Below, piece after piece: positions 4,808 to 22,420 of a stretch of DNA of 64,000 nucleotides. The notes under the pieces were generated by a model. The model ran no database searches. It was not told the DNA's origin and saw nothing but the letters and a program-made list of their open reading frames with translations. The position numbers were made by a program, and so were the translations under genes. Position 1 is the stretch's first letter, and each line of letters opens with the position of its first letter. The DNA lies in IMG/VR virus record IMGVR_UViG_3300033143_006101, positions 1-64,000 of that record, one strand, 5' to 3'.

Positions 4808-4829
4808 AGTAAAAAAGGAGATAGATAAA

Positions 4830-5379: not shown

Positions 5380-5394
5380 TTATGCAGGGAAAGA

Positions 5395-6811: not shown

Positions 6812-6822
6812 AGGAGAATAAG

Positions 6823-7143: not shown

Positions 7144-7152
7144 GGGGATACT

Positions 7153-7380
7153 ATGAAAGTATCAAAAATAATAATTGAGCATGAAGGAGAAGAGTTTGTA
7201 TTTCCTGTGTATGAAGAAGAAGGTGGTTTCTGGACTACTTTAGAAGTTCGTCCTGGGTGGCATTTGAATACTCAGACATTTGATGAAAATACTTATGATG
7301 AACTTATAAAAAATGTTAAAGAAGCTTTTAAAGCACTTATTGAAGAGGATAAAAAAGAGAAGGAAGAAAAAGAAGAATAG
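7153..7380 (+). CDS. HicB-like antitoxin domain protein (no toxin partner in window)
   Basis: VYEEEGGFW...PG...TQ...TYDELIKNVKEA matches the HicB N-terminal pattern. Confidence 0.6.
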   Translation: MKVSKIIIEHEGEEFVFPVYEEEGGFWTTLEVRPGWHLNTQTFDENTYDELIKNVKEAFKALIEEDKKEKEEKEE

Positions 7381-7416
7381 TATGTCAATAACAGATACTG
7401 ACATTCAAAAAAATAA

Positions 7417-7500
7417 GCCTCTGTGGTGGAGCTGGAAGACACGCCAGATTTAGGATCTGGTGCTCGAAAGGGCGTGGGGGTTCGAAACCCTCCAGGGGCA
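7417..7500 (+). tRNA. tRNA-Leu(TAG)
   Basis: Type II cloverleaf with long variable arm; CCAGA-TTTAGGA-TCTGG; TTCGAAA. Confidence 0.92.
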
Positions 7501-7512
7501 AAGGAGAAAAAT

Positions 7513-7671
7513 ATGGATAAAGAACATATGTTATTAGTTTTAGGTGGCGTTGTGCTCATAATAGTAATAATCGTAGCAAACTTTAAATATCCTTATTCTC
7601 AAATAAACCATAAAGGTCGTATAGATGGTTTAGAAAAACGTATGGAGACATTGGAAGAAAGGATTAGATGA
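7513..7671 (+). CDS. small membrane protein
   Basis: Start at MDKEHMLL after AAGGAG; one TM helix plus coiled-coil tail. Confidence 0.55.
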   Translation: MDKEHMLLVLGGVVLIIVIIVANFKYPYSQINHKGRIDGLEKRMETLEERIR

Positions 7672-8015
7672 AATTAGCTATTGTAGGCTCAAGAAATTTT
7701 AAGAGTTTTAGGAAAATGTATTTAAGCATTCAAAAATTAATGGAAGTTTCTGATATAGAATTAATTGTTTCTGGAGGAGCCAAAGGTGCAGATACACTTG
7801 CTGAGCATTTTGCTGATATGTATAATATACCAAAAAAGATATTTAAACCAGATTGGAATACATTCGGTAAAAGGGCAGGCTTTCTTAGAAATAAAGACAT
7901 AGTTGATACAGCCGATCAAGTAATAGCATTTTGGGATGGAAAAAGTAAAGGTACCAAATCAACTATTGATTTAGCAAAGGAACAAAATAAATTATTAAAA
8001 ATAATAAATATATAA
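7668..8015 (+). CDS. DUF2493/YspA-like SLOG family protein
   Basis: AIVGSRNF, IVSGGAKGAD, AGFLRN, AFWDGKSKGT. Confidence 0.85.
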   Translation: MKLAIVGSRNFKSFRKMYLSIQKLMEVSDIELIVSGGAKGADTLAEHFADMYNIPKKIFKPDWNTFGKRAGFLRNKDIVDTADQVIAFWDGKSKGTKSTIDLAKEQNKLLKIINI

Positions 8016-8026
8016 GGAGATGCTAG

Positions 8027-8311
8027 ATGAAAGTATTAGGAGATGCAGTTTTAGTAAGAGAAGAGGAGCCTGATGAGGAAAAAAAAGTAGGAAGTCTTTA
8101 TATTCCTCCCAGTGTTGAACATGTTCTTTGTTATGGAACAGTAGTATCTGTAGGAAGAGGGGTTATTTCTGCAGGGAAAATAGTTGGTTCAGAATTATCA
8201 GAAGGAGACAGAATAATGTTTAATGCTCATACTAAAGTACCTATGGAAATTGAAGGAGAAGAAAAAAATCTTTTTCTGATTAAAGAAAATCAAGTATTAG
8301 CAATTTTGTAA
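8027..8311 (+). CDS. groES: co-chaperonin GroES-like protein
   Basis: LGDAVLV, GSLYIP mobile loop, GTVVSVGRG, EGDRI, IKENQVLAIL. Confidence 0.85.
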   Translation: MKVLGDAVLVREEEPDEEKKVGSLYIPPSVEHVLCYGTVVSVGRGVISAGKIVGSELSEGDRIMFNAHTKVPMEIEGEEKNLFLIKENQVLAIL

Positions 8312-8321
8312 GGAGAAATAT

Positions 8322-9128
8322 ATGATACTTAAACCAGGATCAGTACCAGAACCATTTGAAATGTTTACAGAACATCGTCCTTGGGGATATTATGAAAGAT
8401 ATGGAGATAATGTGCATTGTACACCTAAGATTCTTTATGTTAAAAAGAATGAGATGCTTTCAATGCAATACCATTTCAAGAGAGACCAATTTTATCTTGT
8501 ATTAGATGATCATTTTATTGTAGAGTATAGTAGTAAGCCTATTCCTGTTGAAATATTAGATGAACCAAATGAAGCAAAGCGTTTCGCAGAAGTAGAGCAA
8601 TTTTTAAAAGATCATTTGATAGTTACTACTGGATTTGTAGGATCTAAGTTTGGATTTAAGAGGCATGTCATTCATAGGGTAACTTACGTAGGAGAACAAG
8701 AAACAGGTAAGATTTTTGATCTGGCTTTTGGTGTTAATGATGAGACAGATATTGTTAGAGTAAAAGATGAGTATGGAAGAGAGAGCAAAAAGTTAAAATA
8801 CTATGATAAGACTTGTCTTTTTGACATTATACAAGATAAAGTCAGAAAAGACCTCCAATCTCCAGCTATTCTAATAATAAAACAGGAAAGAGAGCAAAAT
8901 TATGGTAATATTTTAGATAATTTTCCTACTGCAAAGCAACAAATACTGTATGATTTGCAAAAAGAAGGATATGCTCTTATTAAATTACCAGCAGAACTGG
9001 ATGGATCGGCGTTTTTTGCAAAATTACAACCAAAGTATACTAATGAATCTTTAAGTTTTATCTTAATGAATGAAAAAGGGGAAATAGTAAAATATTTTCC
9101 TCAAGATACGTTTGGAACAATCAAATAA
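8322..9128 (+). CDS. cupin resembling the type II mannose-6-phosphate isomerase C-terminal domain, with an unknown C-terminal extension
   Basis: RPWGYYE, LSMQYHFKR, HRV, DIVRVKDEYGR. Confidence 0.7.
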   Translation: MILKPGSVPEPFEMFTEHRPWGYYERYGDNVHCTPKILYVKKNEMLSMQYHFKRDQFYLVLDDHFIVEYSSKPIPVEILDEPNEAKRFAEVEQFLKDHLIVTTGFVGSKFGFKRHVIHRVTYVGEQETGKIFDLAFGVNDETDIVRVKDEYGRESKKLKYYDKTCLFDIIQDKVRKDLQSPAILIIKQEREQNYGNILDNFPTAKQQILYDLQKEGYALIKLPAELDGSAFFAKLQPKYTNESLSFILMNEKGEIVKYFPQDTFGTIK

Positions 9129-9213
9129 GCTGCGGTGGTGAAATTGGTAGACACATCAGGTTTAAGCCCTGATGCCCTTTAGTGGCATGGGGGTTCAACT
9201 CCCCCCCGCAGTA
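9129..9213 (+). tRNA. tRNA-Leu(TAA)
   Basis: Type II cloverleaf; TCAGG-TTTAAGC-CCTGA; GGGGG-TTCAACT-CCCCC. Confidence 0.9.
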
Positions 9214-10151
9214 ATGCTTTCTAATTCTTTTCGTGTAATAGTTCTGGTTCCAAATTTTTTAACTACAATACTTGCAGCTTTATTGGCGAGTTTAGTACAT
9301 TTGTGTATTGGGCAACCTGATGCTAAAGTAACTGCTAATATTGCTATTACAGTATCACCTGCTCCAGACACATCATAAACATCCTGGGTTTCTACAGGTA
9401 AATGGATGCATTTTTTGGATGAGATTAAACTCATACCTTTGGAAGATCTTGTAATTAAGAGATATTGGAAGCCATATTCTTTAATAATTTGTCTTCCTAA
9501 AGTTTCTATTGCAGTATCATTGTTATCCACTTTTTTATTAACAAGTGTGGATAACTCATTTAAATTTGGGGTTACAATGTAAGCTTTTGTATATTTAGAC
9601 CAATCTGTTCCCTTTGGATCCACAATGGTTTTTTTATTCCAAGTTATTGCTACTTTAATTATATATTGGCATAAATCATCATCAAGTAACCCCTTATTAT
9701 AATCAGATAGTATTACACATTCAAATTTATTTATATTATCAAGAACTTGATTTCTTATTGTTTTTTTTATTGCAGTTGTGGGAGGTGAATAATCTTCTGT
9801 ATCTATTCTAACTATTTGTTGATATTGAGCAACTATTCGCGTTTTAGTTATTGTAGTACTTTGAGTATCATACAAGGAGTAATATATGTTTCTTTCCTCT
9901 AATAGCTTTTTTAAAATGGATCCATAGTTATCTTTCCCAATTAGTCCTATTAAATAAGGATGGGCATGGACAGATGCAATATTATCAGCTACATTTGCTG
10001 CTCCACCCGGGTTTTGTATTATTTTATCTACTTTAATAACAGGAACGGGTGCTTCAGGGGATATTCTATCAACATTACCTATGTAATATTGATCTAACAT
10101 AGCATCCCCGATAATTAATACTGTTGCATTGGAAAAGTTTAAGTTTTTCAT
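9195..10151 (-). CDS. rfaE1: D-glycero-D-manno-heptose-7-phosphate kinase (HldE/RfaE domain I, PfkB family)
   Basis: IGDAMLDQYYIGNVDRISPEAPVPV, GGAANVA, LSDYNKG, VDPKG, TPNLNE, DVSGAGDT. Confidence 0.92.
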   Translation of the reverse strand: MKNLNFSNATVLIIGDAMLDQYYIGNVDRISPEAPVPVIKVDKIIQNPGGAANVADNIASVHAHPYLIGLIGKDNYGSILKKLLEERNIYYSLYDTQSTTITKTRIVAQYQQIVRIDTEDYSPPTTAIKKTIRNQVLDNINKFECVILSDYNKGLLDDDLCQYIIKVAITWNKKTIVDPKGTDWSKYTKAYIVTPNLNELSTLVNKKVDNNDTAIETLGRQIIKEYGFQYLLITRSSKGMSLISSKKCIHLPVETQDVYDVSGAGDTVIAILAVTLASGCPIHKCTKLANKAASIVVKKFGTRTITRKELESITAGGS

Positions 10152-10191
10152 ATCATGTTTTTTTTGAGTAAAAAATATTACATATTACATG

Positions 10192-10218
10192 ATACTTAAA
10201 ATAGATGAAATTTTAAGG
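10192..10218 (-). promoter_or_regulatory. putative phage late promoter driving rfaE1 (CCTTAAA-N16-GTAT)
   Basis: One mismatch to the motif found upstream of structural operons; same 16-nt spacer. Confidence 0.5.
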
Positions 10219-10255
10219 TAAAAAATAGTAGTTAAAAAAGAATATAACTCCATTT

Positions 10256-10282
10256 CCCTAAATTATATAAAAGATCTTCTAT
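10256..10282 (+). promoter_or_regulatory. putative phage promoter CCCTAAA-N16-CTAT
   Basis: Motif copy in the divergent intergenic region. Confidence 0.55.
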
Positions 10283-10322
10283 CATTTAATATGTTTATAA
10301 AGTACAAATAAGGGGGATAATC

Positions 10323-10616
10323 GTGTCAATTTTGAATTGCTTTGATTGTACATATAATAAAATAGGAGCTGAATGCACCCATCCAAAAAGTAGTTCACGT
10401 AAATATGATGAAAACCAGTATCACTGTACATTTTTTAAAGAAAGAAAAAAAGCAAATCTTACAGTAGTAAAATGTTTAGAATGTACGTATCATGAACCAG
10501 CTGATTGTAAACATCCTAAAAATACCCCAGCTAATTTTTTAAATTTTTGGTATAGAACTGGCGATAAAGAATGTAATTACTTTAAGAAAAAAAATGATGT
10601 TTTAGTACGACAATAA
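10323..10616 (+). CDS. Cys-rich protein with two internal repeats
   Basis: CxxCTY...CxHPK...CxxFK occurs twice. Confidence 0.6.
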   Translation: MSILNCFDCTYNKIGAECTHPKSSSRKYDENQYHCTFFKERKKANLTVVKCLECTYHEPADCKHPKNTPANFLNFWYRTGDKECNYFKKKNDVLVRQ

Positions 10617-10635
10617 ATAAGAAAGATGGTATAAA

Positions 10636-10896
10636 ATGAATGATATAATTAATGCTTTATTTGAATTAGGTGGTGCTATTCTAACATGGTTTAATGTAAA
10701 GAAAATCCTAAAAGATAAAGAAGTAAAAGGTGTATATTGGCCTATTTGGTTATTCTTTACAAGCTGGGGATATTGGAATTTATATTATTATCCCAGCGTA
10801 GATCATCAATGGAGCTTTTATGCTGGCATATTATTAGTATTTGGTAATACGGTATGGGTTTCATTAGCATGGTATTATAATAGAAAGCAGAAGTAA
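10636..10896 (+). CDS. PQ-loop/SemiSWEET-like 3-TM membrane protein
   Basis: Three hydrophobic segments; KDKEVKGVYW loop. Confidence 0.5.
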   Translation: MNDIINALFELGGAILTWFNVKKILKDKEVKGVYWPIWLFFTSWGYWNLYYYPSVDHQWSFYAGILLVFGNTVWVSLAWYYNRKQK

Positions 10897-10921
10897 TTTA
10901 GATTTGATTTTTTATACATAT

Positions 10922-10992
10922 GGGTCGGTAGCTCGAAGGACGAGCAACGGGCTTTTAACCTGTAAGCGAGAGTTCGATTCTCTCCCTGCCTA
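10922..10992 (+). tRNA. tRNA-Lys(TTT)
   Basis: ACGGG-CTTTTAA-CCTGT; GAGAG-TTCGATT-CTCTC; one acceptor-stem mismatch. Confidence 0.8.
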
Positions 10993-10996
10993 ATAA

Positions 10997-11069
10997 CTCT
11001 CCGTAGCTCAGTAGGAAGAGCATCTGCCTTCTAAGCAGATTGTCACAGGTTCGAGCCCTGTCGGAGAGG
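10997..11069 (+). tRNA. tRNA-Arg(TCT)
   Basis: CTCTCCG/CGGAGAG acceptor; TCTGC-CTTCTAA-GCAGA. Confidence 0.92.
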
Positions 11070-11081
11070 CATGGAGAAAAA

Positions 11082-11267
11082 ATGGAGTTAAGAACATTTA
11101 TAGACATGCCCATTCTTAACACACAACAAATAGATTCTATGTCTAATGAAGAATATAAAAAGTTGTGCGAAAGGGGTAAACATAAGATTAAAGAAAGTTA
11201 CTGTCATATTGGAGAAGATATTATGGATGTAATTGTAAAAGGCAGAAACTTTGATAGATATGCTTAA
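11082..11267 (+). CDS. hypothetical protein
   Basis: Start MELRTF after GGAG, downstream of the tRNA. Confidence 0.5.
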   Translation: MELRTFIDMPILNTQQIDSMSNEEYKKLCERGKHKIKESYCHIGEDIMDVIVKGRNFDRYA

Positions 11268-11273
11268 ATAACT

Positions 11274-12060
11274 ATGAGACCGGAAAATATGTATAATTAC
11301 CCAAAATATTTTTATGGAGTAATCTATAAGATTACAAACATTCAAAATAATAAATGTTATATTGGAAAAACTTCTAATGTATACTTTAAAAATATATTAG
11401 AAGTCATTTTTATGAGGCACTAAAAAAGAGAGATAACAATAAGAGATATTTTTATAATACTATAAGAAAATATGGAAAAGAAAATTTTAAAATAGAAATT
11501 TTAGGTTTTTGCTATTCTGAAGAAGAGTTATATGAATCTGAGATTGAATGTATAGCTTTTTATCAAAGTAGTAATTCACTTTATGGATATAATTTAACAA
11601 AAGGTGGGGATGGTGGAGATTTAAGATGTAATTTTTCTGAAGCAGATAAATTAAAATGGAGAAAAAAGATAAGTAAAGCAACAAAAGAAAGAATACCGTG
11701 GAATAAAGGATTAACAAAAGAAACGGATAAAAGAGTATTAAAAAGTAGTAATACGATGAAAAAGCATGTGCGAACAAAAGAACATTGTGAAAAAATTAGT
11801 AAAGCTATTAAAGGTAAAAAAAGATCAGATGAAATAAAAAAGAAAATGTGTGAGGCACACAAAAAAAAATACGGAAATGGTTTTTTTGGAAAAAAACATA
11901 CTAAAAAACAAAAGAAAAAATGAGTTTATTACGAAAAGGAAAACCGAGTAAAAGAAAAGGAAAAATGCATGAGGAGATCTTTGGAAAAGAAAAATCGAAA
12001 GAAATAAAAGAAAAGATAAGAAGCACACTTTTAACTAAAAATTCTAAAAAGGTAGAATAA
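11274..12060 (+). pseudogene. frameshifted GIY-YIG homing endonuclease with NUMOD3-like repeats
   Basis: GVIYKITN...CYIGKT, then after a shift near 11390: IRKYGKENFKIEIL...GYNLTKGGDG...PWNKG...FFGKKHT; second shift near 11915; absent from the ORF track. Confidence 0.8.
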
Positions 12061-12061
12061 T

Positions 12062-12619
12062 ATGGAAGAGACCTTAGTTTTAAACACAGGATATATTCCT
12101 ATTAGAATTGTATCGGATCGTGAGGCTATTTGTCTTCTTTATCAATCAAAAGCTTATACTGTAATTGAAACTGATCGTGTAATGCGTTCACCTTCAATTG
12201 TATTTAAAATACCATCCGTAATTGCTCTTGTAGGATATAATAAATTTCCACAAAGGAAAGTTGGATTTTCTAAATTGAATATAATTTATCGTGATGATAT
12301 GACTTGTCAATATTGTGGAAAAAGATTTAACATGAATGAACTTACAATAGATCATGTTATCCCAAGAAGTAGATGGGCAGATGAAAAAAGAACAAATAAG
12401 AAAAATTGGACAAATTGGCTTAATTGCGTCTGTTCATGTAAATGGTGCAATAATGCAAAAGGGAATAAACTTCTTCATGAATTAAGATGGAGTTTACCTA
12501 GAAAACCTTTTGAACCAAAATATCTGCCTCATATTGTTATTTCTTTCGATAAAGCAGAAAAAAAAGGTTGGATCCCATTTTGCAAATTTAATGTAAAATT
12601 ACTGAACAGACTTTCATAG
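12062..12619 (+). CDS. HNH endonuclease (McrA-like)
   Basis: TLVLN...RDDMTCQYCG...TIDHVIPRSR...CSCKWCNNAKG. Confidence 0.9.
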   Translation: MEETLVLNTGYIPIRIVSDREAICLLYQSKAYTVIETDRVMRSPSIVFKIPSVIALVGYNKFPQRKVGFSKLNIIYRDDMTCQYCGKRFNMNELTIDHVIPRSRWADEKRTNKKNWTNWLNCVCSCKWCNNAKGNKLLHELRWSLPRKPFEPKYLPHIVISFDKAEKKGWIPFCKFNVKLLNRLS

Positions 12620-12874
12620 GAGGACAGTAATGAGGGATAGATATTATAGTGCAGATGATTTTGTAGAAGACATTCTTGACATAGCGTCAGATGTTTTTGA
12701 GATTTTTATTGATATAAGTTTAGGTATCATAGGTCTTGCGTTTAATGACTTCTAAGAATCTAAAACATAGAAGCGAAGATAGTATTATTGGTTCATTTTT
12801 ACTTATTTTAATGGTAGCATCTGCAGTAGCTTTAGTTATTGCTTGCGGATATCTATTATTTAATGGGTAAATAA

Positions 12875-12946
12875 GCCCCTGTAGCTCAGTGAAAGAGCAC
12901 ATGACTACGGATCATGGTGTCGAGGGTTTAAATCCTTCCAGGGGCA
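12875..12946 (+). tRNA. tRNA-Arg(ACG)
   Basis: GCCCCTG/CAGGGGC acceptor; CATGA-CTACGGA-TCATG. Confidence 0.88.
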
Positions 12947-12959
12947 CAGGTATATTATA

Positions 12960-13250
12960 ATGAGACCGGAGATTAAAATTATGAAACTATATAAATGTAG
13001 GTGTATGATAATCCCTGAAGAGGAATTAGAAATACAAGAATATAAAGAAGGAGCTTTAAAAGAAAAGTATTGTTGTGACGGCTGTGATGCTTATTTTTAT
13101 CCTTGTAACCTCTTCAATTACTTTATGTATTATCTTGGTAAACCTTTTGGGTATGAAGCTTGGGGTTTGAACGAAATGCTGACTTGGAATGATATAGAAT
13201 GGTGGTTAGTAAAAATAAAAGTAAGAATAGAAGAATTTTTTAATAAGTGA
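12960..13250 (+). CDS. hypothetical protein
   Basis: ORF between tRNAs. Confidence 0.5.
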   Translation: MRPEIKIMKLYKCRCMIIPEEELEIQEYKEGALKEKYCCDGCDAYFYPCNLFNYFMYYLGKPFGYEAWGLNEMLTWNDIEWWLVKIKVRIEEFFNK

Positions 13251-13319
13251 CCGTAGCTTAATTGGTAAAGCATTCGGATGATAACCGAAGGAGCGAAGGT
13301 TCAATTCCTTCCGGTCGCA
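13247..13319 (+). tRNA. tRNA-Ile(GAT)
   Basis: GTGACCG/CGGTCGC acceptor; TTCGG-ATGATAA-CCGAA. Confidence 0.88.
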
Positions 13320-13328
13320 ATAAAATAG

Positions 13329-13357
13329 TTGATATAGTCGAACTTACTGTATATATT
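13329..13357 (+). promoter_or_regulatory. sigma70-like promoter TTGATA-N17-TATATT, probably giving a near-leaderless transcript of the HNH gene
   Basis: Canonical spacing; ATG at 13367 lies 9 nt after the -10 box with no Shine-Dalgarno. Confidence 0.5.
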
Positions 13358-13366
13358 AAATTTAAA

Positions 13367-13907
13367 ATGTATAGAAGGTTCGAATCTATAAAAAACACTA
13401 GAAGATTAAATGGTTATATTGTTATATATAAACCAGATCACCCCAAAGCAATGACATCCAAAAATTGGGAGGGTTATATTTACGAGCATATAGTGGTTGC
13501 TGAACAAATATTAGGTCGAAAACTGACAAGTACCGAGGTTACACACCATGAAGATGAAGTAAGTTCAAACAATAGTCCAAGTAATTTAAAAGTTTTTAGA
13601 ACACGAGGAGATCATAATAGATACCATAAAGGATTTGAAATTATTAGATTATCAGATAGTACGTATTAATGTAGTATTCATTCCTGCATAGATTGTGGTA
13701 AAGAGCTTTTTAAAGTAAAAATTACTAGATGTTGGGAATGCCATAAAATTTGGAAAGCAAAAAACATACCTTCAAAAAAGGTTTTAGAAAAGTTAATTTG
13801 GAAAAAACCAACAGTATATATAGCAAAGGATTTTGAAGTTTCAGACAAGGCAGTAGAAAAATGGTGTAAGAAGTATAATCTTCCAAAACCCCCAAGAGGT
13901 TATTAGA
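13367..13907 (+). pseudogene. HNH homing endonuclease with in-frame stops (HNH + zinc finger + HTH tail)
   Basis: YIYEHIVVAEQILGR...HH...NNSPSNL; frame continues past TAA at 13667 as CIDCGK...CWEC...AKDFEVSDKAVEKWCKKYNLPKPPRGY, then TAG where W is usual. Confidence 0.75.
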
Positions 13908-13923
13908 TGAAACATAAATATAA

Positions 13924-14000
13924 GGGTTCTTAGCTTAGCTGGTCGAAAGCACTTGACTCATAATCAAGAGATTTCCTGGGTTCGAATCCCAGAGAGCCCA
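13924..14000 (+). tRNA. tRNA-CAT (Ile2/lysidine type or elongator Met)
   Basis: GGGTTCT/AGAGCCC acceptor; CTTGA-CTCATAA-TCAAG; TTCGAAT. Confidence 0.88.
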
Positions 14001-14515: not shown

Positions 14516-14887
14516 ATGCCAAGAAAAGTTAAAACTATAGGAAATGATTTACCATCTCCTAGTAGTAAGCATCAAGTTTTAGGAACTGTTTTTTTAGTAC
14601 AAGAAGGTACATCTACTGGAATTTATACTTTTAATTTTGAAGATGGTAGTATCATATACTTCGAAAATGAAATCAAACAATCTTTTGAATATCTTTTAGT
14701 GGATAACATAGGAGAAGGTAGAGTACGCTTCGCTTTTAATAAAATAGGTTTACCATTAGTTAGTTCAATAGACGGAGCAAAGACGTTGCGTGCCGGGGAT
14801 AGTTTGTATATCCAGGATTTTGTAAGAAATATCACTCTATTTTTTATAGAATCTTCTATTGTTGAATTAGTTTTAATGTCTAAATAG
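14516..14887 (+). CDS. putative small virion protein (one TSTG)
   Basis: Beta-rich ORF in the late operon. Confidence 0.5.
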   Translation: MPRKVKTIGNDLPSPSSKHQVLGTVFLVQEGTSTGIYTFNFEDGSIIYFENEIKQSFEYLLVDNIGEGRVRFAFNKIGLPLVSSIDGAKTLRAGDSLYIQDFVRNITLFFIESSIVELVLMSK

Positions 14888-15818: not shown

Positions 15819-18800
15819 ATGGCTATAATAACTTCAAAATACCATCAAGACTTAAATACAAGTTGTGGTATACATATCCCTCACTCGTTTGAATATGCTA
15901 CGTCTACTGGTAGAATAAATGCTACAGGATTAACTGCAGTAGATGTTTATAAATTAGCTCTGCAAAAAAGTGATGATACTTTATGGATTTTAACAAATCA
16001 TGGTCCTGTTACCTGGAAATTACTTGGTGGTGCTACTTGGGGTACTATTACTGGAACTTTATCCGATCAAACTGACTTGCAAGATGCTTTAGATGATAAA
16101 TCTGATACAACACATGGGCACACACATGCTTCTACTACCGGAAAAACAGCAAATGATCACCATAACCAACAGCATGCTATTGATGGGAGTGATCATACAG
16201 GCACATTGGATCACTCAGAAATAAACGACGATGAGAATACCAAGCATAGGATTATAAATGATGCAGATACGAGTGTTACTGAGTTATGGTCAGCTGATAA
16301 AATAAATACTGAACTCGGGACAAAAACTAGTACAGGTCATACACATGAAGAATCAGATATTACTGATTTAGATCATGATGCTCAAAAAATTAAGGGAGTT
16401 ATAGTCGATGACTCGGCCAAAGCGGATGGAAAGGTACTAACATATGAATCCTCAACTGGAGAGATAATATATGGTGATGTAGTAACTACTGATGAGAAGG
16501 TTAAGGCAAGTGCGGGTGATCCTACAACAGGATATTTAGATGCTAAAGTTGACAATGCAACTATAGAAATAAGTGCTAATAAATTAAAAGTTAAAGATAG
16601 TGTATTTTCAAGCACGGGCCATGCCCATACTGAATCGGATATAACAGATTTGGATCATTATGATAGTTCTGATTTCTCTACAGATTTTGGGAATGCCGAT
16701 CTTGCAAATCTTGGTACTAAAAACCACAGTGATCTTAATGATGATGAAGTCGCACAGCACCGTATTATAAATGATTCAGGAACTAGTGCTACTGAACTCT
16801 GGTCAGCTGATAAAATCAACGCAGAGTTGAATACTAAAACTTCAACTGGATATGTGTTAGATCAATTCACAGATATGAAAGAGCCCACCGGATTTCCCAA
16901 TAGAACAGATAGTACTATATCGTTCTCTGATTCAAGCCCAGACAGAACTTTTACTATTGCTCCGGCAGTAAGTACTTTTGACTACTATATTAAAGGAGTA
17001 AAGTATACAAAATCTGGTGCGGTGACACGGCAAATAACTGACGACGAAGGATTGCACTTTATATATTTTGATGGGGAAACCCTTACATCGACAACTACCT
17101 GGAGTGATATTCTTTTTACTGATTATGCCATAGCATCAATAGTTTATTGGGATGATGACAACAATTTACATGTATACTTCGCAGACGAACGACATGGCAT
17201 AACCATGGATGGGGCGATGCATAAACTGTGGCACGATATTATTGGATGTGCGTGGGAAGAAGGATTAGCTTTAGGAAACATGACTGTAAATGGTAGTGGT
17301 GATGTTAATAGCCACGCCCAGTTCTCTGTATCTGATGGAGAAATACATGATGAAGATTTGGAACATGAGATAGAAGATGGAAGTCCTCAGGATTTAAGTA
17401 CCATCGCACAGATACCTATTATGTATCGCTCTGGTGCTACTGGCGTATGGCGTATGAAAGCAGCAGATGACTTCCCAATCATATATGATGGGACTGCTGG
17501 TTATAATCCAACAGGTGGCAACGATAGAGTACCCTATAACGAATGGACTGGTAGTACTTGGCAACTCATAGAAGTAGGATCAGATAATGACTTTGTTCTC
17601 GTTCATTATTTTGCTACTAATGATACCGAACACCCTATTATTGGAATACAAGGGCAAGATGAGTATACAAATCTCGGCAATGCTAGAGAAGGTGCAACTA
17701 CCGAAATAAATAACCTAGTGACTTCAGGTCTACCAACTGCTGAGTTTACACCAATAGCTACATGTATTTTTCAAACTAATGATGACGGTTATACTAATAC
17801 TCCTCATGCAAAAATAAGAAGCACTGATACTGGAGATGATTATGTAGATTGGAGAGGTTCAAAATTATCTCAATCTGCGGGTACTAGCAGTCACCCAAAC
17901 CTATCTGAATTAGGCTTCGATGAATCAGGCCATAACGGATTCCAGAGAGAAACATATCAAGATACTTCTAATCCTGATGCAGACCATGATAGTGCAGATA
18001 CTAATGCTATAGGTATAAAATTCAGAGCAGGTGACTTCTGGGAAAACACAAGCACGGATATCGTATATATATGCCTTGATGCTACAGCTACTGCTGCAAT
18101 ATGGAACGCGATTGTAGATGTGAGTACAGGCCAAACTCTTACAAATAAAACTCTAACTACACCTACTATTGGCGACTTGACAAATGCTACACATGACCAT
18201 ACTGATAATGCGGGTGGTGGTGTTCTAAATCACTCAGACTTGAACGATGACGAAGCTACAAAACATAGACTTATAAATGACTTGGATACTTCCGCAACCG
18301 AGTTATGGTCCTCAGATAAGATTAATACTGAACTTGGGACAAAGACTTCAACAGGCCACACCCATACAGAAAGTGATATTACAGATCTCGATCACGATGC
18401 CCAGAAAATTAAAGGTGTTATTGTTGATGATTCAGCAAAGGCTGATGGGTACGGATTAGTTTATGAAAGTTCTACGGGAAATATTATATATTCGGCTAGT
18501 GCTGGTGGAACAGACAATAATGCTATTCATGACAATATAGCTGGCGAAATATCTATTATTACAGCAAAGAGTTCTCCGACAGGCTCAGATAAGCTTTTGA
18601 TAGAAGATGCTGCAGATACCAATAAAAAGAAGAGCATAGATATTCAAAATCTTCCACTTAGGCCATTGACCGATGCTTATATTTGGGTTGGGATCGGTGG
18701 AGTTGAAACAGCTGTACCTTTGGCTCATACTCATAACCATGCGACTGATATTACTAATGTTCTTCCAGATCAACATCATAATGAAGATCATCAGGCCAGA

Positions 18801-20942
18801 CATAATAGTGGGGGTGCCGATGCGTTAAAACTTGATGATTTAGCTACTCCCGATGACAATACAGATCTAAACGCCACAACTTCTGCACATGGTTTATTGA
18901 AAAAACTTGATAATGACGCAACCCATTTTCTTGACGGACAGGGAAACTGGAGCACACCAGACCATGCTAAGTTATTAAACCTTGATTATGTGGGCTCAGA
19001 ACATACAGGGTTTATGCGTGATGCTTATCTAACAACTTCAGATCCTACGGAAGAAAATGATAATGCAGACACGGCTGCCCTGGGTCGGGAGTTTAATGAA
19101 GGTAACGCTTGGGTCAATACCTCTTCGGGTCGGGTGTTTGTTTGTAAAGATGCTTCACTAGGCGAGGCTATATGGTATGAGGTAGGTGCGTATGATATGG
19201 ATATGCTAACTGGTTATACTATGAAATATATTTCAGACGAAGAAGTTGAGATTGCTTTCGGTTACTGTAGAGATAATAATGATACTTGGAATATTGATTC
19301 ACATATTCCTTTGACGATTGATATAACTGACAGCGGGAAAAATGGATTAGATGTTGATAGTGTTACAGCAAACTCATGGTATTTTGTTCATGTTATTAAG
19401 AATCCGACTACCCTGGAAGTGGCTGGACTATTCTCTCTTAGTCAGTACAAGCCAACTCTTCCGAGTGGCTTTACAGTATTTAGAAATATCGGAGCGTTTC
19501 CGACAGATGGAACAAGTGATTTAATAGCAGGCCATACAGTAGGGGAAGGACTGGATAAATATTTTATATATGATATAAGACATGAGATGGCGTATGCTGA
19601 TACTACTGGTTCGTGGGAGGATGTTGATTTAAGCAGTCGTGTTCCTCCTGATGTGCGGCTGGTGGAGTTAGGATTTTCAACTCCGTCTGGTGGAGATGAT
19701 GGAATTTATGTAAGAGAAAAAATATCAGGTCAAGGGTCAACTGATTATCAATTAGATATACAATTATCCGGTGGGCCAGGTGCGTGTACTAGTAGATGTG
19801 GCTGTGATGAAGATCAGATTATTCAGTGGAACTCGTATTGGGGTGGCGGTGCATGGTATCTGTATGTGTTAGGATTTTATATATCGTTAGCTGCGACAAA
19901 ATTTGTAGGTATATATTGGGAAACAAGTGACTTCGATGAAAGTCAGCAGATAGATTTTGATACAACAGCTTCCGGTGCGAATGTATCGGGTAATGTTACA
20001 AACTTCCCAGTATGTGTAAGGATAACAGACACAGATATTTTAGATGCAGTAAGAGATGGTGCTCCTGATATAAGATTTCTTGATAAGGATGGAACAACAT
20101 GGCTGGACTATGAAGTTGAGAAATGGGATAAGGTCGGCGAAGAAGCAGTTGTTTGGGTATTGGTTCCACAGATAGATGGCAATAAAGATGACGATTATAT
20201 CACTATGTATTATGGTAATATTTGGGTACAAGATGGTCAGGATAGCAAGGCTGTGTTTAGTATTGCTAATGGCTTTCTTGGAGTATGGCACATGAATCAA
20301 GATCCATCTGTAGAGGATATACACGACAGTTCTGAAAAAGGAAATGATGGTGTACCTACTGCTAATATGGAAGATTATGATTTGATGGCAGGCCCAATAA
20401 ATAAGTCTATTGATTTTTATGTTGATGGCTCTGAATATATAAATGTAACAGGTTTTGATGAAGATATGACTGATGCGACTTTGAGTGCGTGGGTATATGT
20501 AGATACAGAAGAAGATACGGTCAAGGGCGTGTTGTTCAGCAGAGGTACAGATACTTGCGGATTACACTTGTCAGATGATTCTGGTGATAATAGAGTTTGC
20601 TATCACTGGGATGGGGATGCTGGTGCTTGGGGTTGGCAAGGTGGCGGTATTGTAGATGCAGAGGAATGGAACTTTGTCGCCATGACTATTGATGCAGATG
20701 CGGACGATACAGGGTATGTTGGAAAGAACGACGGTGATTGGGATAGTGCAACAAACTCTATAACTACTGGAACGGTTACTCTGGACGATTTAAGGATAGC
20801 AACGGATGAGGCATCCGCATCCAGAGGGTTCGATGGTAAAATTGCAGAAGTAAGAATTGAGAGTGTTATACGAACAGACGACTGGTTGAAGTTGTGCTAT
20901 ATGAATCAGAAAGCGACTGATAAGTTAATAAGTTTTCCATAA
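15819..20942 (+). CDS. large fibre/receptor-binding protein with His-rich repeats and C-terminal DUF2341-like and LamG-like domains
   Basis: WGTITGTLSDQTDLQ, HxH(E/T)ESDITDL repeats, NFPVCVR...DIRFLDKDG...YEVEKW...ITMYYGN, F(D)GKIAEVRI. Confidence 0.75.
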   Translation: MAIITSKYHQDLNTSCGIHIPHSFEYATSTGRINATGLTAVDVYKLALQKSDDTLWILTNHGPVTWKLLGGATWGTITGTLSDQTDLQDALDDKSDTTHGHTHASTTGKTANDHHNQQHAIDGSDHTGTLDHSEINDDENTKHRIINDADTSVTELWSADKINTELGTKTSTGHTHEESDITDLDHDAQKIKGVIVDDSAKADGKVLTYESSTGEIIYGDVVTTDEKVKASAGDPTTGYLDAKVDNATIEISANKLKVKDSVFSSTGHAHTESDITDLDHYDSSDFSTDFGNADLANLGTKNHSDLNDDEVAQHRIINDSGTSATELWSADKINAELNTKTSTGYVLDQFTDMKEPTGFPNRTDSTISFSDSSPDRTFTIAPAVSTFDYYIKGVKYTKSGAVTRQITDDEGLHFIYFDGETLTSTTTWSDILFTDYAIASIVYWDDDNNLHVYFADERHGITMDGAMHKLWHDIIGCAWEEGLALGNMTVNGSGDVNSHAQFSVSDGEIHDEDLEHEIEDGSPQDLSTIAQIPIMYRSGATGVWRMKAADDFPIIYDGTAGYNPTGGNDRVPYNEWTGSTWQLIEVGSDNDFVLVHYFATNDTEHPIIGIQGQDEYTNLGNAREGATTEINNLVTSGLPTAEFTPIATCIFQTNDDGYTNTPHAKIRSTDTGDDYVDWRGSKLSQSAGTSSHPNLSELGFDESGHNGFQRETYQDTSNPDADHDSADTNAIGIKFRAGDFWENTSTDIVYICLDATATAAIWNAIVDVSTGQTLTNKTLTTPTIGDLTNATHDHTDNAGGGVLNHSDLNDDEATKHRLINDLDTSATELWSSDKINTELGTKTSTGHTHTESDITDLDHDAQKIKGVIVDDSAKADGYGLVYESSTGNIIYSASAGGTDNNAIHDNIAGEISIITAKSSPTGSDKLLIEDAADTNKKKSIDIQNLPLRPLTDAYIWVGIGGVETAVPLAHTHNHATDITNVLPDQHHNEDHQARHNSGGADALKLDDLATPDDNTDLNATTSAHGLLKKLDNDATHFLDGQGNWSTPDHAKLLNLDYVGSEHTGFMRDAYLTTSDPTEENDNADTAALGREFNEGNAWVNTSSGRVFVCKDASLGEAIWYEVGAYDMDMLTGYTMKYISDEEVEIAFGYCRDNNDTWNIDSHIPLTIDITDSGKNGLDVDSVTANSWYFVHVIKNPTTLEVAGLFSLSQYKPTLPSGFTVFRNIGAFPTDGTSDLIAGHTVGEGLDKYFIYDIRHEMAYADTTGSWEDVDLSSRVPPDVRLVELGFSTPSGGDDGIYVREKISGQGSTDYQLDIQLSGGPGACTSRCGCDEDQIIQWNSYWGGGAWYLYVLGFYISLAATKFVGIYWETSDFDESQQIDFDTTASGANVSGNVTNFPVCVRITDTDILDAVRDGAPDIRFLDKDGTTWLDYEVEKWDKVGEEAVVWVLVPQIDGNKDDDYITMYYGNIWVQDGQDSKAVFSIANGFLGVWHMNQDPSVEDIHDSSEKGNDGVPTANMEDYDLMAGPINKSIDFYVDGSEYINVTGFDEDMTDATLSAWVYVDTEEDTVKGVLFSRGTDTCGLHLSDDSGDNRVCYHWDGDAGAWGWQGGGIVDAEEWNFVAMTIDADADDTGYVGKNDGDWDSATNSITTGTVTLDDLRIATDEASASRGFDGKIAEVRIESVIRTDDWLKLCYMNQKATDKLISFP
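16210..18491 (+). repeat. diverged internal duplication of an ~88-aa module (~16210-16473 and ~18229-18491; partial copy ~16724-16851)
   Basis: TELWSxDKINTELGTKTSTGHTHxESDITDLDHDAQKIKGVIVDDSAKADG...YESSTG in both full copies. Confidence 0.85.
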
Positions 20943-20951
20943 GAGGTTAAA

Positions 20952-21479
20952 ATGAGCAAGATACCATATCAAATATTAGTAGAGTCATCGACAGGAAAAG
21001 TTCTATCAGCTGGGTATACCAGACTTAGAGCTGGTGAAGGACAGACAAGGTATAAAAATGAGCAGTTACCTGCTGGAGCAAATCTAGCAAATGAGACTTG
21101 GTATCGAACAAGTACAGGTTATGAGACTAATACATTAGTTACAAATAAAGCAAATAGAATAAAAGAAATTGATGAAAAAACTAAAGAGCTGATTGAACAA
21201 GGGTTCGCGTTTGATGGGCACATATTTAGTTTGTCTTTGGAAGCACAAAAAAACTTCCTAGCTTTAAAAACTGTGTCTGCTTTGATGTCCTGGCCAAAAG
21301 CATTGACTACAAAATGTGATATGGAGTATCTGTTAGCAGAAGAAGATTTAGATGCTTGTATAGGAACAGGGCTTGCTGTTGTAAATGGCTATCTTGATTC
21401 TGGTAGAGCTTTAAAAATAAGTACTAATGCTGCTACAACACAGGAAGAGCTTGACGCTATTGTAGATAATAGAACATAA
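20952..21479 (+). CDS. DUF4376-like tail fibre assembly/associated protein
   Basis: Follows the fibre gene; GFAFDGHIFSL...C-terminal AATTQEELDAI. Confidence 0.6.
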   Translation: MSKIPYQILVESSTGKVLSAGYTRLRAGEGQTRYKNEQLPAGANLANETWYRTSTGYETNTLVTNKANRIKEIDEKTKELIEQGFAFDGHIFSLSLEAQKNFLALKTVSALMSWPKALTTKCDMEYLLAEEDLDACIGTGLAVVNGYLDSGRALKISTNAATTQEELDAIVDNRT

Positions 21480-21488
21480 AGAGGGGCT

Positions 21489-22223
21489 ATGAAAAAGTTG
21501 ATATTTGTAATACTGCTAATAGTACTATCTAGTAGTACTTATGCAGAAAGTAATCCATTTCAATTATATAAGCCTAATTATATAATAGCTGGTAATCAAG
21601 ATGATCAGGTAAAAGGACAGGTATCTTTTAAATATGCTTTAATATATCCTGAGAATATAGGGTTATATTTTGGTTATTCCCAATTAATGTTTTGGGATGC
21701 ATATAAAACATCGTCTCCTTTCAGAGATATTAATTTTAACCCGGAATGTTTTTGGTTTCATCAATTTAATTATGGCATGCTAGATAATATACAAGTTGGT
21801 CTTATTGAACATAAATCTAATGGTAGAGATGGTGAAGAATCCAAGGGATGGAATAGAAGTTATTTACGATCCCAGATTAGTTATGGTACTAGAATAAACA
21901 TAGGATTTATTGGCGAAGTTTTTTATTTATATGGATTAAGTAGTAACAATGAAGATATTGGTGAATATATAGGTTTCTATGAAGCAGAATTATTTATAAA
22001 ATTCAAAAAAAGAAGAACAAATTGGACTAGTAGAGAATCTATATATATTCGTGGTGGATCTAGTTTATCTAAAGGTTGGGTTGAAGGTGGTATCAAATTT
22101 AGATTAGTATCATATAAAATTCAACCTAATTTGTATTTACAAGTATTTCATGGTTATGCAGAAAGTTTATTAGAATATGATGAGAAAGAAACAGCTATTC
22201 GTCTTGGTGTAACTATGGAATAA
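21489..22223 (+). CDS. pldA: outer membrane phospholipase A (OMPLA)
   Basis: Signal peptide; YKPNY, KGQVSFK, YFGYSQ, SSPFRDINFNPE, catalytic HKSNG, WNR, GYAESLLEY. Confidence 0.9.
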   Translation: MKKLIFVILLIVLSSSTYAESNPFQLYKPNYIIAGNQDDQVKGQVSFKYALIYPENIGLYFGYSQLMFWDAYKTSSPFRDINFNPECFWFHQFNYGMLDNIQVGLIEHKSNGRDGEESKGWNRSYLRSQISYGTRINIGFIGEVFYLYGLSSNNEDIGEYIGFYEAELFIKFKKRRTNWTSRESIYIRGGSSLSKGWVEGGIKFRLVSYKIQPNLYLQVFHGYAESLLEYDEKETAIRLGVTME

Positions 22224-22245
22224 TAGCTATGGATCCATAGTTAAG

Positions 22246-22284
22246 TTAAAAAGCCCTAAAGATACCTTCTTTAGGGCTTTTTAA
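22246..22284 (+). terminator. rho-independent terminator (potentially bidirectional)
   Basis: AAAAAGCCCTAAAGA-TACCT-TCTTTAGGGCTTTTT. Confidence 0.85.
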
Positions 22285-22332
22285 TAGATTTAAAAAATTA
22301 AGCATTTCCTTTACAATTTTGTACTTCAATCA

Positions 22333-22359
22333 CCTTAAAAAACTTCAAAAAATCACTAT
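22333..22359 (+). promoter_or_regulatory. putative phage late promoter CCTTAAA-N16-CTAT
   Basis: Exact motif copy after the terminator. Confidence 0.65.
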
Positions 22360-22420
22360 ATTTTTTCTAACGCATTAATAATTACAATCAGATGAATTAA
22401 TTTTTAGGAGGAGAAAATCC

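What the first reader, a model, noticed from the sequence alone, without database searches (positions are those of the whole stretch)
21489..22223. Phage-encoded outer-membrane phospholipase A at the end of a late operon
Seen: an intact OMPLA with signal peptide and catalytic HxSNG, last gene before a terminator, following the fibre and its chaperone. Established: PldA hydrolyses mislocalised outer-leaflet phospholipids and assists colicin release. Inference: a spanin-independent route to outer-membrane disruption at lysis, or OM remodelling/superinfection exclusion. It also indicates a diderm host.
Basis: partly seen in the sequence, partly recalled or inferred. Interest (0 to 1): 0.62.

Follow-up and report, generated by a model that had tools for sequence, protein, structure and literature searches.

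The report
Phage-borne outer-membrane phospholipase A gene
A 253-kb jumbo phage carries an intact, exported outer-membrane phospholipase A belonging to a so far undescribed phage-borne branch of that enzyme family; in other phages the same gene sits among cell-lysis genes, so it probably helps break the host's outer membrane at the end of infection, though this is untested.

Summary
ORF 21489-22223 (+), 244 aa, is a clear PF02253/OMPLA protein (E 1e-37). It has a Sec-type signal peptide and a confidently modelled 12-stranded barrel (pLDDT 91.7, TM 0.75 to E. coli and Salmonella OMPLA). H108/S110/N122 align with H142/S144/N156. It is the last gene of a fibre / fibre-assembly-like operon, before a strong hairpin.

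The window is the first 64 kb of a complete 252,876-bp myovirus-type record with no integrase found.

New findings:
- At least 12 phage-context OMPLAs group with Spirochaetota (Leptospirales) pldA in one strongly supported clade. One phage-bacterium switch suffices on the trees.
- GenBank phages and PHROGs hold no counterpart, and no paper describing one was found.
- In one small phage the gene overlaps a small membrane protein and a peptidoglycan-enzyme homologue. In a relative of this phage it lies inside the region syntenic to this phage's own putative lysis cassette, at 71.3-74.5 kb outside the window.
- In three lineages the gene follows a fibre-assembly-like gene, as it does here.

Most likely role: an enzymatic helper of outer-membrane breakdown at lysis (about 0.45). 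"Spanin-independent" is not shown, because a spanin-like gene pair exists in the cassette. A fibre-linked envelope modification and a moron or membrane-homeostasis role remain open.

The parts
15819..20942 (+). 1707-aa tail-fibre-like protein, first gene of the operon. It has three copies of a roughly 60-aa His/Asp-rich repeat and C-terminal DUF2341 and LamG domains.
   Evidence: DUF2341 2e-14, Laminin_G_3 5e-10, weak PTR hit.
20952..21479 (+). 175-aa tail-fibre-assembly-like protein, starting 9 nt after the fibre gene.
   Evidence: phrog_1348 'tail fiber protein' at 7.9e-6. The gene in the same position in L004, L108 and L116 hits phrog_1348, phrog_188, phrog_105 and phrog_1807. Direct similarity to the L004 protein is not significant.
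21480..21486 (+). Ribosome-binding site AGAGGGG. Only 9 nt separate this gene from the upstream stop, so co-transcription with the fibre genes is inferred.
21489..22223 (+). OMPLA (PF02253) coding sequence, 244 aa.
21489..21545 (+). Sec-type signal peptide, residues 1-19, with predicted cleavage after TYA.
   Evidence: Inspection. The model shows a helix at residues 2-15 followed by a low-confidence linker. All phage and bacterial relatives have an equivalent N-terminus.
21810..21854 (+). Active-site stretch from H108 to N122: catalytic H108, S110 and N122, oxyanion G112, and Ca-site R113 and S118.
   Evidence: Alignment with Salmonella PldA. H108, S110 and G112 are invariant in 42 homologues.
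22245..22285 (+). Intrinsic-terminator hairpin with an 18-bp stem and A-run and T-run arms, closing the operon.
   Evidence: dG -32.2 kcal/mol, z -7.45.
22286..22420 (+). AT-rich spacer with an AGGAGG site before the next structural operon, which starts at 22421.

Best explanation
Shown: the gene encodes a complete OMPLA-family enzyme with a signal peptide, a 12-stranded barrel and the His-Ser-Asn triad, oxyanion Gly and Ca-site Ser/Arg in place. It is carried by a complete 253-kb myovirus-type phage. It is the terminator-proximal gene of a fibre operon. It belongs to a group of OMPLAs found on many different phage contigs, whose nearest cellular relatives are the pldA genes of Spirochaetota (Leptospirales).

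Inferred mechanism:
1. The protein is made late, together with the fibre genes.
2. It is exported by Sec and inserted by the host BAM machinery into the outer membrane, where, like cellular OMPLA, it stays latent as a monomer.
3. When holin and peptidoglycan hydrolase action perturbs the envelope, phospholipids enter the outer leaflet.
4. The enzyme then dimerises with Ca2+ and hydrolyses those phospholipids to lysolipids and fatty acids.
5. This weakens or dissolves the outer membrane and so completes or accelerates lysis and virion release.

In this phage it is probably an accessory to a separate lysis cassette at 71.3-74.5 kb, not a proven replacement for spanins. The host is inferred to be a diderm of the Spirochaetota, probably Leptospirales.
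For: - Family, fold and active site.
- Phage origin.
- Operon structure.
- Phage lineage: 12 phage-context copies (window, L002, L003, L004/L108, L006, L102, L103, L105, L110, L115, L116) form one clade with Spirochaetota copies. Support is 100/100 and SH-aLRT 94 (99 with the long-branched L117 row). Only one phage-bacterium label change is needed on either tree. The catalytic His and Ser are retained in all copies.
- Gene composition is phage-like: GC 28%, GC3 14%.
- Link to lysis in L002: the order is a 147-aa coiled-coil protein with a C-terminal TMD, a 52-aa protein, a 66-aa TMD protein, OMPLA, then a 211-aa protein. The 4-nt overlaps flank OMPLA on both sides.
- The L002 211-aa protein hits phrog_3000 (3.9e-25) and phrog_33083 'endolysin' (8.5e-13). 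It is homologous (E 1e-28) to this phage's 239-aa protein at 71707-72426.
- That 239-aa protein has invariant His and Cys in an S-A-G-C motif and an L,D-transpeptidase-like fold. It is flanked by TMD proteins.
- In L102, which is syntenic with 66-74 kb of this phage, OMPLA lies between an Amidase_2 gene and the lipoprotein / TMD / secreted-protein genes.
- In L006, OMPLA is flanked by two small TMD proteins and a lipobox protein.
- Established knowledge: colicin lysis proteins act through OMPLA (PMC4305986). Neisserial OMPLA mediates autolysis (Bos et al. 2005, listed). From my own knowledge, T4 holin gene t lies directly after fibre genes 37 and 38, so a lysis gene at the end of a fibre operon has precedent.
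Against: - No activity, expression or phenotype data exist. No sequencing run holding the region was listed.
- In this phage the gene lies 50 kb from the putative lysis cassette.
- The cassette contains a spanin-like overlapping gene pair, so OMPLA may be dispensable for lysis.
- In L102 an HNH endonuclease block lies between the amidase and OMPLA, so that position could reflect insertion of mobile DNA and not function.
- The commonest context, in three lineages, is after a fibre-assembly-like gene. This fits a receptor- or adsorption-linked role equally well.
- The endolysin nature of phrog_3000 proteins is itself inferred: the Foldseek hit is weak (E 2.5e-3, TM 0.40). A second hydrolase candidate (Amidase_2) sits at 236 kb without membrane-protein neighbours.
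- Four phage copies, including this one, end in Glu and not in the aromatic residue typical of barrel C-termini.
- The homodimer prediction gave no verdict.
Confidence: 0.45

Rival explanations
1. Fibre-linked envelope modification. The enzyme alters outer-leaflet lipids of the infected cell or its debris. This would block superinfection, or stop progeny from being lost on membrane fragments and vesicles, in the way receptor-blocking outer-membrane proteins do when encoded next to receptor-binding genes (T5 Llp, phi80/N15 Cor).
For: The order fibre, phrog_1348-like assembly protein, OMPLA recurs in three divergent lineages: this window; L004 and L107-L109 at 45-48% GC; and L116. In L003 the gene borders the fibre module, next to a homologue of window ORF 14516-14887. 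From my own knowledge, exclusion genes are typically linked to receptor-binding genes.
Against: A general phospholipase has no evident receptor specificity. Known exclusion proteins of this type are lipoproteins that bind a protein receptor, not enzymes. The L002 arrangement inside a lysis cassette does not fit. Fibre modules are classic operon ends where any late gene can ride along; T4 gene t is an example.
Confidence: 0.2
2. Moron or homeostasis gene. The phage supplies OMPLA to keep the outer membrane asymmetric and intact during a long jumbo-phage infection, or during lysogeny in the smaller phages. This is the housekeeping role of PldA, and its purpose would be to preserve the membrane and not to destroy it.
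For: Positions vary widely: near ThiF in L103, near a Tad2-like gene in L105, before RusA in L115. This is typical of mobile cargo genes, and HNH endonucleases are nearby. From my own knowledge, fibre-module and lysis-cassette borders are the classic moron sites of lambda (lom, bor). Only 33 of 122 genomes in the likely host order have an OMPLA match, so a phage copy could supply a function the host lacks.
Against: In this window there is no separate promoter-terminator unit: the gene is 9 nt from the upstream gene. In L002 it overlaps both neighbours. No integrase was found in this phage. Long retention across very different phages points to a benefit in the lytic cycle.
Confidence: 0.15
3. 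Not a functional phage gene: a bacterial fragment mis-assembled into the record, or an enzymatically dead barrel kept for another reason.
For: The only hits in GenBank 'phage' records are bacterial contigs or a 4-kb fragment. Four phage copies lack the C-terminal aromatic residue.
Against: The gene is embedded between phage structural genes on one strand with 9-nt spacing. Its GC and GC3 match the phage. Eleven further phage-like contigs carry relatives. The catalytic residues are intact and invariant.
Confidence: 0.03

Closest known systems
Enterobacterial outer-membrane phospholipase A (PldA/OMPLA; PDB 1QD6, 1QD5, 7EZZ)
   Same: Same Pfam family. Same 12-stranded barrel (TM about 0.75). Same H-x-S-N-G-R motif, with the Asn of the triad and the Ca-site Ser in register. 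Both have a signal peptide.
   Different: Only 26-32% identical. It scores far below the NCBIfam PldA equivalog cut-off (75 against 369 bits). It lacks about 45 N-terminal and first-loop residues of the mature enzyme (225 against 269 aa). It ends in Glu and not Phe. It is encoded by a phage.
pldA of Spirochaetota / Leptospirales (metagenome-assembled genomes L011, L012, L013; G001, G056)
   Same: These are the nearest cellular relatives, 43-51% identical. They fall in the same strongly supported clade.
   Different: The bacterial copies form two separate starred subclades. They carry a 20-45-residue N-terminal extension after the signal peptide, end in Phe, and sit among ordinary chromosomal genes.
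Spanins (lambda Rz/Rz1 type), the canonical third step of lysis in diderms
   Same: The proposed outcome is the same: removal of the outer-membrane barrier after peptidoglycan breakdown. In L002 the gene occupies the place in the cassette where spanin genes would normally be expected.
   Different: The mechanism would be lipid hydrolysis by an integral barrel, not membrane fusion by a periplasm-spanning pair of lipoprotein and type-II membrane protein. There is no lipobox and no Rz-family hit.
Mycobacteriophage LysB (lipolytic esterase that detaches the mycolate outer membrane) and phiKT disruptin gp28 (own knowledge; Holt et al. is listed)
   Same: These are precedents for non-spanin, phage-encoded agents that destroy the outer layer as the last step of lysis. 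LysB is also a lipid esterase.
   Different: LysB is a soluble alpha/beta-hydrolase acting on mycolyl-arabinogalactan. Disruptin is a cationic peptide. Neither is a membrane barrel or related to OMPLA.
Patatin-like phospholipase A2 in the putative lytic cassette of Wolbachia phage WO (PMC9203015)
   Same: A phage-encoded phospholipase next to a holin-like gene and beside the tail module, proposed (not shown) to act in lysis.
   Different: An unrelated fold (patatin) and a cytoplasmic or secreted enzyme. The host lacks detectable peptidoglycan.
Colicin lysis proteins (BRP) acting through host OMPLA (PMC4305986); neisserial OMPLA autolysis (Bos et al. 2005, listed)
   Same: They show that OMPLA activation is sufficient to make a diderm envelope leaky or lytic.
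   Different: In those systems the mobile element encodes only the trigger and uses the host's enzyme. Here the phage encodes the enzyme.
Lambda lom and bor; T5 Llp and phi80 Cor (own knowledge)
   Same: Phage-encoded outer-membrane proteins located at fibre-module or lysis-cassette borders.
   Different: These are non-enzymatic, unrelated in sequence, and act in lysogeny or receptor blocking.

Membership tests
OMPLA / phospholipase A1 (Pfam PF02253) | Match to the family profile above its curated cut-off | tested here: met
   130.4 bits against a cut-off of 27, E 1.1e-37, profile positions 35-256 of 257. The whole-genome scan gives the same single hit.
OMPLA / phospholipase A1 (Pfam PF02253) | 12-stranded antiparallel beta-barrel | tested here: met
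   AF2 model pLDDT 91.7. The top 8 Foldseek hits are OMPLA structures, TM 0.74-0.77.
OMPLA / phospholipase A1 (Pfam PF02253) | Catalytic triad His142-Ser144-Asn156 (E. coli numbering) | tested here: met
   H108, S110 and N122 are in register with Salmonella PldA. His and Ser are invariant in 42 homologues. The third residue is Asn or Asp in relatives.
OMPLA / phospholipase A1 (Pfam PF02253) | Oxyanion and Ca2+ site residues (Gly146, Arg147, Ser152) | tested here: met
   G112, R113 and S118 are aligned. The second-site Asp149 is Gly here. Ser106 of the partner monomer was not evaluated.
OMPLA / phospholipase A1 (Pfam PF02253) | Export signal for outer-membrane targeting | tested here: met
   An N-terminal signal peptide is seen by inspection. 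No dedicated predictor was available. The C-terminal residue is Glu, not aromatic.
OMPLA / phospholipase A1 (Pfam PF02253) | Ca2+-dependent homodimerisation as the activation step | tested here: inconclusive
   The homodimer prediction scored 0.26 against a mark of 0.32. The tool's verdict was 'no answer'.
OMPLA / phospholipase A1 (Pfam PF02253) | Phospholipase A activity | not testable with these tools
   Needs an enzyme assay.
Enterobacterial PldA orthologue (NCBIfam NF008031 equivalog) | Score above the equivalog cut-off | tested here: not met
   75 bits against a cut-off of 369. This is a distant family member, not an orthologue of E. coli PldA.
Two-component spanin | Type-II inner-membrane protein plus outer-membrane lipoprotein (lipobox Cys), usually adjacent or overlapping genes | tested here: not met
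   OMPLA has no lipobox and is a barrel. There is no PF03245 hit in the genome. The only lipobox candidates (90275-90499 and 165556-165963) have no TMD partner.
Phage lysis-cassette gene (by context) | Adjacency to holin-like and peptidoglycan-hydrolase genes | tested here: inconclusive
   Not met in this phage: the gene is about 50 kb from the cassette at 71.3-74.5 kb. Met in L002. Loosely met in L102. Suggestive in L006.

The most novel reading that the evidence does not exclude
Phages of spirochaete-like diderms have maintained their own OMPLA lineage as an enzymatic device for the last step of lysis. In phages of the L002 type it would replace spanins outright. The chromosomal pldA genes of Leptospirales would then be derived from this phage lineage and not the reverse, since on the outgroup-rooted tree the bacterial clades nest within a grade of phage copies.
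Probability: 0.15. Interest if true: 0.8.

Novelty: new variant of a known kind. Interest (0 to 1): 0.58.

Why it matters
Lysis of diderm hosts is thought to need a dedicated third step. So far that step is known to be carried out by spanins, by a cationic peptide (disruptin) or, in mycobacteria, by the LysB esterase. A phage-maintained OMPLA would add a lipid-hydrolysing outer-membrane barrel to that list. It would also turn the old observation that host OMPLA is activated during colicin release and autolysis into a phage-encoded strategy. It gives a handle on the almost unknown phages of Leptospirales-like spirochaetes, including their host assignment and lysis genes. The protein is a compact (225-aa mature) OMPLA that can be tested directly in E. 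coli lysis-complementation systems. The recurrent linkage to fibre-assembly genes is unexplained and could point to a second role, connected with adsorption.

Tried and rejected
- Megablast of 15-27 kb against GenBank phages found no match.
- tblastn of the protein against 50,697 GenBank phage records gave 5 hits, all under 32% identity. Two are Salmonella contigs, two are 'Acinetobacter phage MD-2021a' contigs annotated pldA, and one is an unannotated 4.3-kb fragment. No bona fide isolated phage with OMPLA was seen.
- PHROGs has no family for the protein.
- IMG/VR pattern scans with two alignments found one other close copy (L006) and one distant copy at a contig end, apart from the window's own record, which such searches may leave out.
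- The first genome contigs attempts failed: alignment too diverse, single-protein patterns too strict. The third attempt worked.
- The first paper search timed out. Four later searches found no description of a phage-encoded OMPLA.
- Complex prediction on the mature homodimer gave 'no answer'. This is not evidence either way.
- The look-up of sequencing runs listed no run, so read laying was not used and expression could not be examined.
- Own-genome scans found no integrase, no Rz family and no T4/lambda-type lysozyme. These families are divergent, so absence of hits is weak evidence.
- L006's endolysin was not found with phrog_3000 or Amidase_2. The DUF261 lead for its 186-aa protein is not backed by Pfam.
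- The similarity between the C-terminal-TMD coiled-coil proteins of G000 and L002 is architectural only (BLASTP E 0.29).
- The Tfa-like proteins of the window and L004 are not significantly similar to each other.
- The consensus promoter scan gave fewer sites than shuffles did and was not used.
- No alternative genetic code was needed.

Full report
**1. The observation**

The ORF at 21489-22223 (+) encodes 244 residues. It starts 9 nt after the preceding gene and has an AGAGGGG ribosome-binding site.

- Family: Pfam PLA1/PF02253 matches at 130.4 bits (E 1.1e-37, cut-off 27) over residues 19-242. PDB OMPLA chains from Salmonella (7ezz) and E. coli (1qd6) match at E about 1e-16.
- Fold: an AlphaFold2 model built on 42 homologues has mean pLDDT 91.7 and shows a signal-peptide helix followed by a 12-stranded barrel. 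Its eight best Foldseek hits in the PDB are all OMPLA, with TM 0.74-0.77 and E about 1e-12. The next fold appears only at E 3e-3.
- Active site: aligned with Salmonella PldA, H108, S110 and N122 stand at the catalytic His142, Ser144 and Asn156. G112, R113 and S118 stand at the oxyanion and Ca2+-site residues (the E. coli numbering is my own knowledge). His, Ser and Gly are invariant across all 42 homologues.
- Export: the N-terminus (KK, a hydrophobic core, then TYA before Glu20) is a typical Sec signal, judged by inspection.
- Operon end: directly after the stop codon, an 18-bp hairpin flanked by an A-run and a T-run (22245-22285) folds at -32.2 kcal/mol, z -7.45.

**2. What carries the gene**

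The window is the first 64 kb of a 252,876-bp virus record with terminal repeats, estimated 100% complete.

- It is 33% G+C, and in the window nearly all genes lie on one strand.
- It carries nine tRNA genes, a tail sheath and a baseplate wedge. No integrase hit was found. This is a jumbo myovirus-type phage.
- Upstream of OMPLA are a 1707-aa fibre-like protein (DUF2341, LamG) and a 175-aa protein that weakly matches a tail-fibre family (phrog_1348, 7.9e-6).
- The OMPLA gene has the phage's own base composition (GC 28%, GC3 14%, against 33 ± 3.5% for phage genes). It is not a recent pick-up or an assembly chimera.

**3. Relatives**

The word-index protein search found 41 homologues, the best only 52% identical. 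I looked up or scanned for their genomic contexts.

Eleven further contigs are phage-like:
- L002 has terminase, portal, Mu-F, protease and capsid genes.
- L003, L004, L107-L110 and L116 have fibre and accessory genes.
- L006 is an 80-kb IMG/VR contig.
- L102 and L103 are syntenic with this phage at 66-74 kb and 159-165 kb.
- L105 has a Tad2-like neighbour.
- L115 has a RusA neighbour.

Other copies sit among ordinary bacterial genes (P0011, P0014, P0019, P0023).

Among 185,579 species genomes, the closest copies belong to an uncultured Leptospirales bacterium (43% over the whole protein) and to Spirochaetota MAGs, followed by Bdellovibrionota. Within the order of that Leptospirales genome, 33 of 122 genomes have a match, the best at 51% identity over the barrel.

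In a careful maximum-likelihood tree rooted on Bdellovibrionota:
- Phage and Spirochaetota copies form one clade with 100/100 support.
- The eight phage-context copies known at that point fall together (84/81).
- The bacterial copies form two starred subclades.

With twelve phage copies the backbone is unresolved, but a single phage-bacterium switch still explains the labels.

Phage copies are shorter at the N-terminus, and four of them (window, P0002, P0005, P0006) end in Glu where the bacterial ones end in Phe.

By contrast:
- PHROGs has no matching family.
- The 50,697 GenBank phage records hold no credible copy.
- IMG/VR holds one other close copy.
- Four literature searches found no description.

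**4. Evidence bearing on function**

*(a) Lysis context.*

In L002 the gene order is a 147-aa coiled-coil protein with a C-terminal TMD, a 52-aa protein, a 66-aa single-TMD protein, OMPLA, then a 211-aa protein. The 4-nt overlaps flank OMPLA on both sides.

The 211-aa protein hits phrog_3000 and the 'endolysin' family phrog_33083. Its homologue in this phage (239 aa, at 71707-72426, outside the window; E 1e-28) has these features:
- Invariant His and Cys, the latter in an S-A-G-C motif.
- A model (pLDDT 81) whose fold hits are nearly all L,D-transpeptidases or L,D-carboxypeptidases. The best is weak, at E 2.5e-3 and TM 0.40.
- Membrane-protein neighbours: a 132-aa protein with a C-terminal TMD, a 145-aa multi-TMD holin-like protein, a 107-aa protein with an N-terminal TMD, and an overlapping 202-aa secreted protein.

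I take 71.3-74.5 kb as the phage's probable lysis cassette.

In L102 this region is syntenic. There OMPLA lies between an Amidase_2 gene and a group of three genes: a lipoprotein, an N-terminal-TMD protein and the homologue of the 202-aa protein. An HNH endonuclease block lies in between.

In L006, OMPLA is flanked by two small TMD proteins and a lipobox protein.

*(b) Fibre context.*

The order fibre, phrog_1348-like assembly protein, OMPLA seen in the window recurs in L004 and L107-L109, and in L116. These are phages of quite different G+C content.

*(c) Spanins.*

No Rz-family hit and no lipoprotein with a TMD partner were found. However, the overlapping pair of an N-terminal-TMD protein and a secreted protein in the cassette is conserved in L102 at 39% identity, E 1.5e-41. 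It could be a spanin substitute. Its weak structural leads point to small outer-membrane barrels.

**5. Interpretation**

The most likely reading (about 0.45) is that the phage makes its own OMPLA late. The host machinery places it in the outer membrane, where it stays latent. It then hydrolyses outer-membrane phospholipids once the envelope is perturbed at lysis, helping to remove the last barrier to release.

The known biology of OMPLA supports such an effect: colicin lysis proteins act through it (PMC4305986), and neisserial autolysis depends on it (Bos et al. 2005, listed). From my own knowledge, T4's holin gene t directly follows fibre genes 37 and 38, so the position here is no objection.

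The word 'spanin-independent' is not justified for this phage.

Rivals:
- A fibre-linked role in exclusion or in protecting progeny from debris (0.2).
- A moron or membrane-homeostasis role (0.15).
- An artefact or dead enzyme (0.03).

The host inference (a diderm, probably Leptospirales-like Spirochaetota) rests on the OMPLA phylogeny and on G+C content only.

**6. Comparison with what is known, and novelty**

The protein is a member of the OMPLA family. All testable defining features are met. It is not an orthologue of enterobacterial PldA (75 against 369 bits on the NCBIfam equivalog).

As a phage function it would work like LysB, disruptin or spanins without being related to any of them. 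It parallels the still hypothetical patatin cassette of phage WO (PMC9203015).

I rate it a new variant of a known kind. The finding is of moderate to good interest because it is directly testable.

**7. Limits**

- No expression or activity data exist. No sequencing run was listed, so no reads were laid.
- The dimer prediction gave no verdict.
- Signal peptides, TMDs and lipoboxes were judged with simple scripts or by eye.
- The gene lists for the genome outside the window come from a greedy ORF caller.
- Tree backbones are weakly supported.

Noticed in passing
G000 71296-74528 (outside the window; locus L091 covers 70408-73905): Putative lysis cassette. It holds a 132-aa coiled-coil protein with a C-terminal TMD, a 239-aa phrog_3000 protein with an L,D-transpeptidase-like (YkuD) fold and an S-A-G-C motif, a 145-aa multi-TMD protein, a 107-aa protein with an N-terminal TMD, a 202-aa secreted protein, and a 104-aa TMD protein. 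phrog_3000 is listed as 'unknown function', so this may be an undescribed endolysin class.
   Followed up: partly
G000 72974-73297 and 73257-73865; L102 7825-8127 and 8162-8677: Conserved overlapping gene pair: a protein of about 100 aa with an N-terminal TMD, plus a 170-200-aa signal-peptide protein without a lipobox. The G000 copy ends in ...SLNF. The two secreted proteins are 39% identical (E 1.5e-41). Weak structural leads point to small outer-membrane barrels such as PagL. This is a candidate non-lipoprotein spanin substitute.
   Followed up: partly
window 15819-22223; L004 304-1709; L108 1895-5415; L116 788-4174: The order tail fibre, phrog_1348-like assembly protein, OMPLA recurs in three divergent phage lineages (33%, 45-48% and 41% G+C). 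The reason for this linkage is unexplained.
   Followed up: partly
window 22209-22223 and the C-termini in alignments A2 and A4: The window OMPLA and phage copies P0002, P0005 and P0006 (also P0003 and P0004, whose context is unknown) end in hydrophobic-Glu (…ME, …FE, …IE, …LE). The bacterial relatives P0011, P0013 and P0014 and the phage copy L006 end in …F, the usual barrel-assembly signal.
   Followed up: no
window 4735-14000: Cluster of nine tRNA genes (His, Trp, Leu x2, Lys, Arg x2, Ile, Met) interspersed with small ORFs.
   Followed up: no
window 15819-20942, 60204-63998 (continuing to 66059) and G000 66133-69585: Three giant fibre-like or LamG-type proteins of 1707, 1951 and 1150 aa. 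The 1707-aa protein has three copies of a His/Asp-rich repeat of about 60 aa. The 1150-aa protein has a three-fold internal repeat.
   Followed up: no
window 46115-47185 and 49389-51128: A nucleotide-sugar epimerase (phrog_540, 1.8e-46) and a GtrB-like glycosyltransferase lie inside the structural region. They may modify the virion or a surface glycan.
   Followed up: no
G000 236244-236921: A second peptidoglycan-hydrolase candidate (Amidase_2, 4e-15) with no membrane-protein neighbours. It could be a virion-associated or T7-lysozyme-like enzyme instead of the endolysin.
   Followed up: partly
G000 137492-140401 (-); L003 115-2487; L102 9000-13316: A large protein with Hint/intein and MJ0330_N domains is shared at 46-51% identity between this phage and the L003 and L102 contigs. 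This marks them as relatives of the jumbo phage.
   Followed up: no
L105 6001-7061: In another phage-like contig the OMPLA gene overlaps a downstream Tad2-like (anti-Thoeris family) gene.
   Followed up: no
L006 9150-9710: A 186-aa protein between two small TMD proteins, just upstream of OMPLA. A language-model lead points to DUF261, which I recall as a Borrelia-associated family (score 0.94). Pfam does not confirm it. If real, it would be a second hint of a spirochaete host.
   Followed up: partly
window 599-2404: A 601-aa protein with weak thymidylate-synthase-family hits (about 1e-8) over only part of its length. It may be a fused or divergent nucleotide-metabolism enzyme.
   Followed up: no
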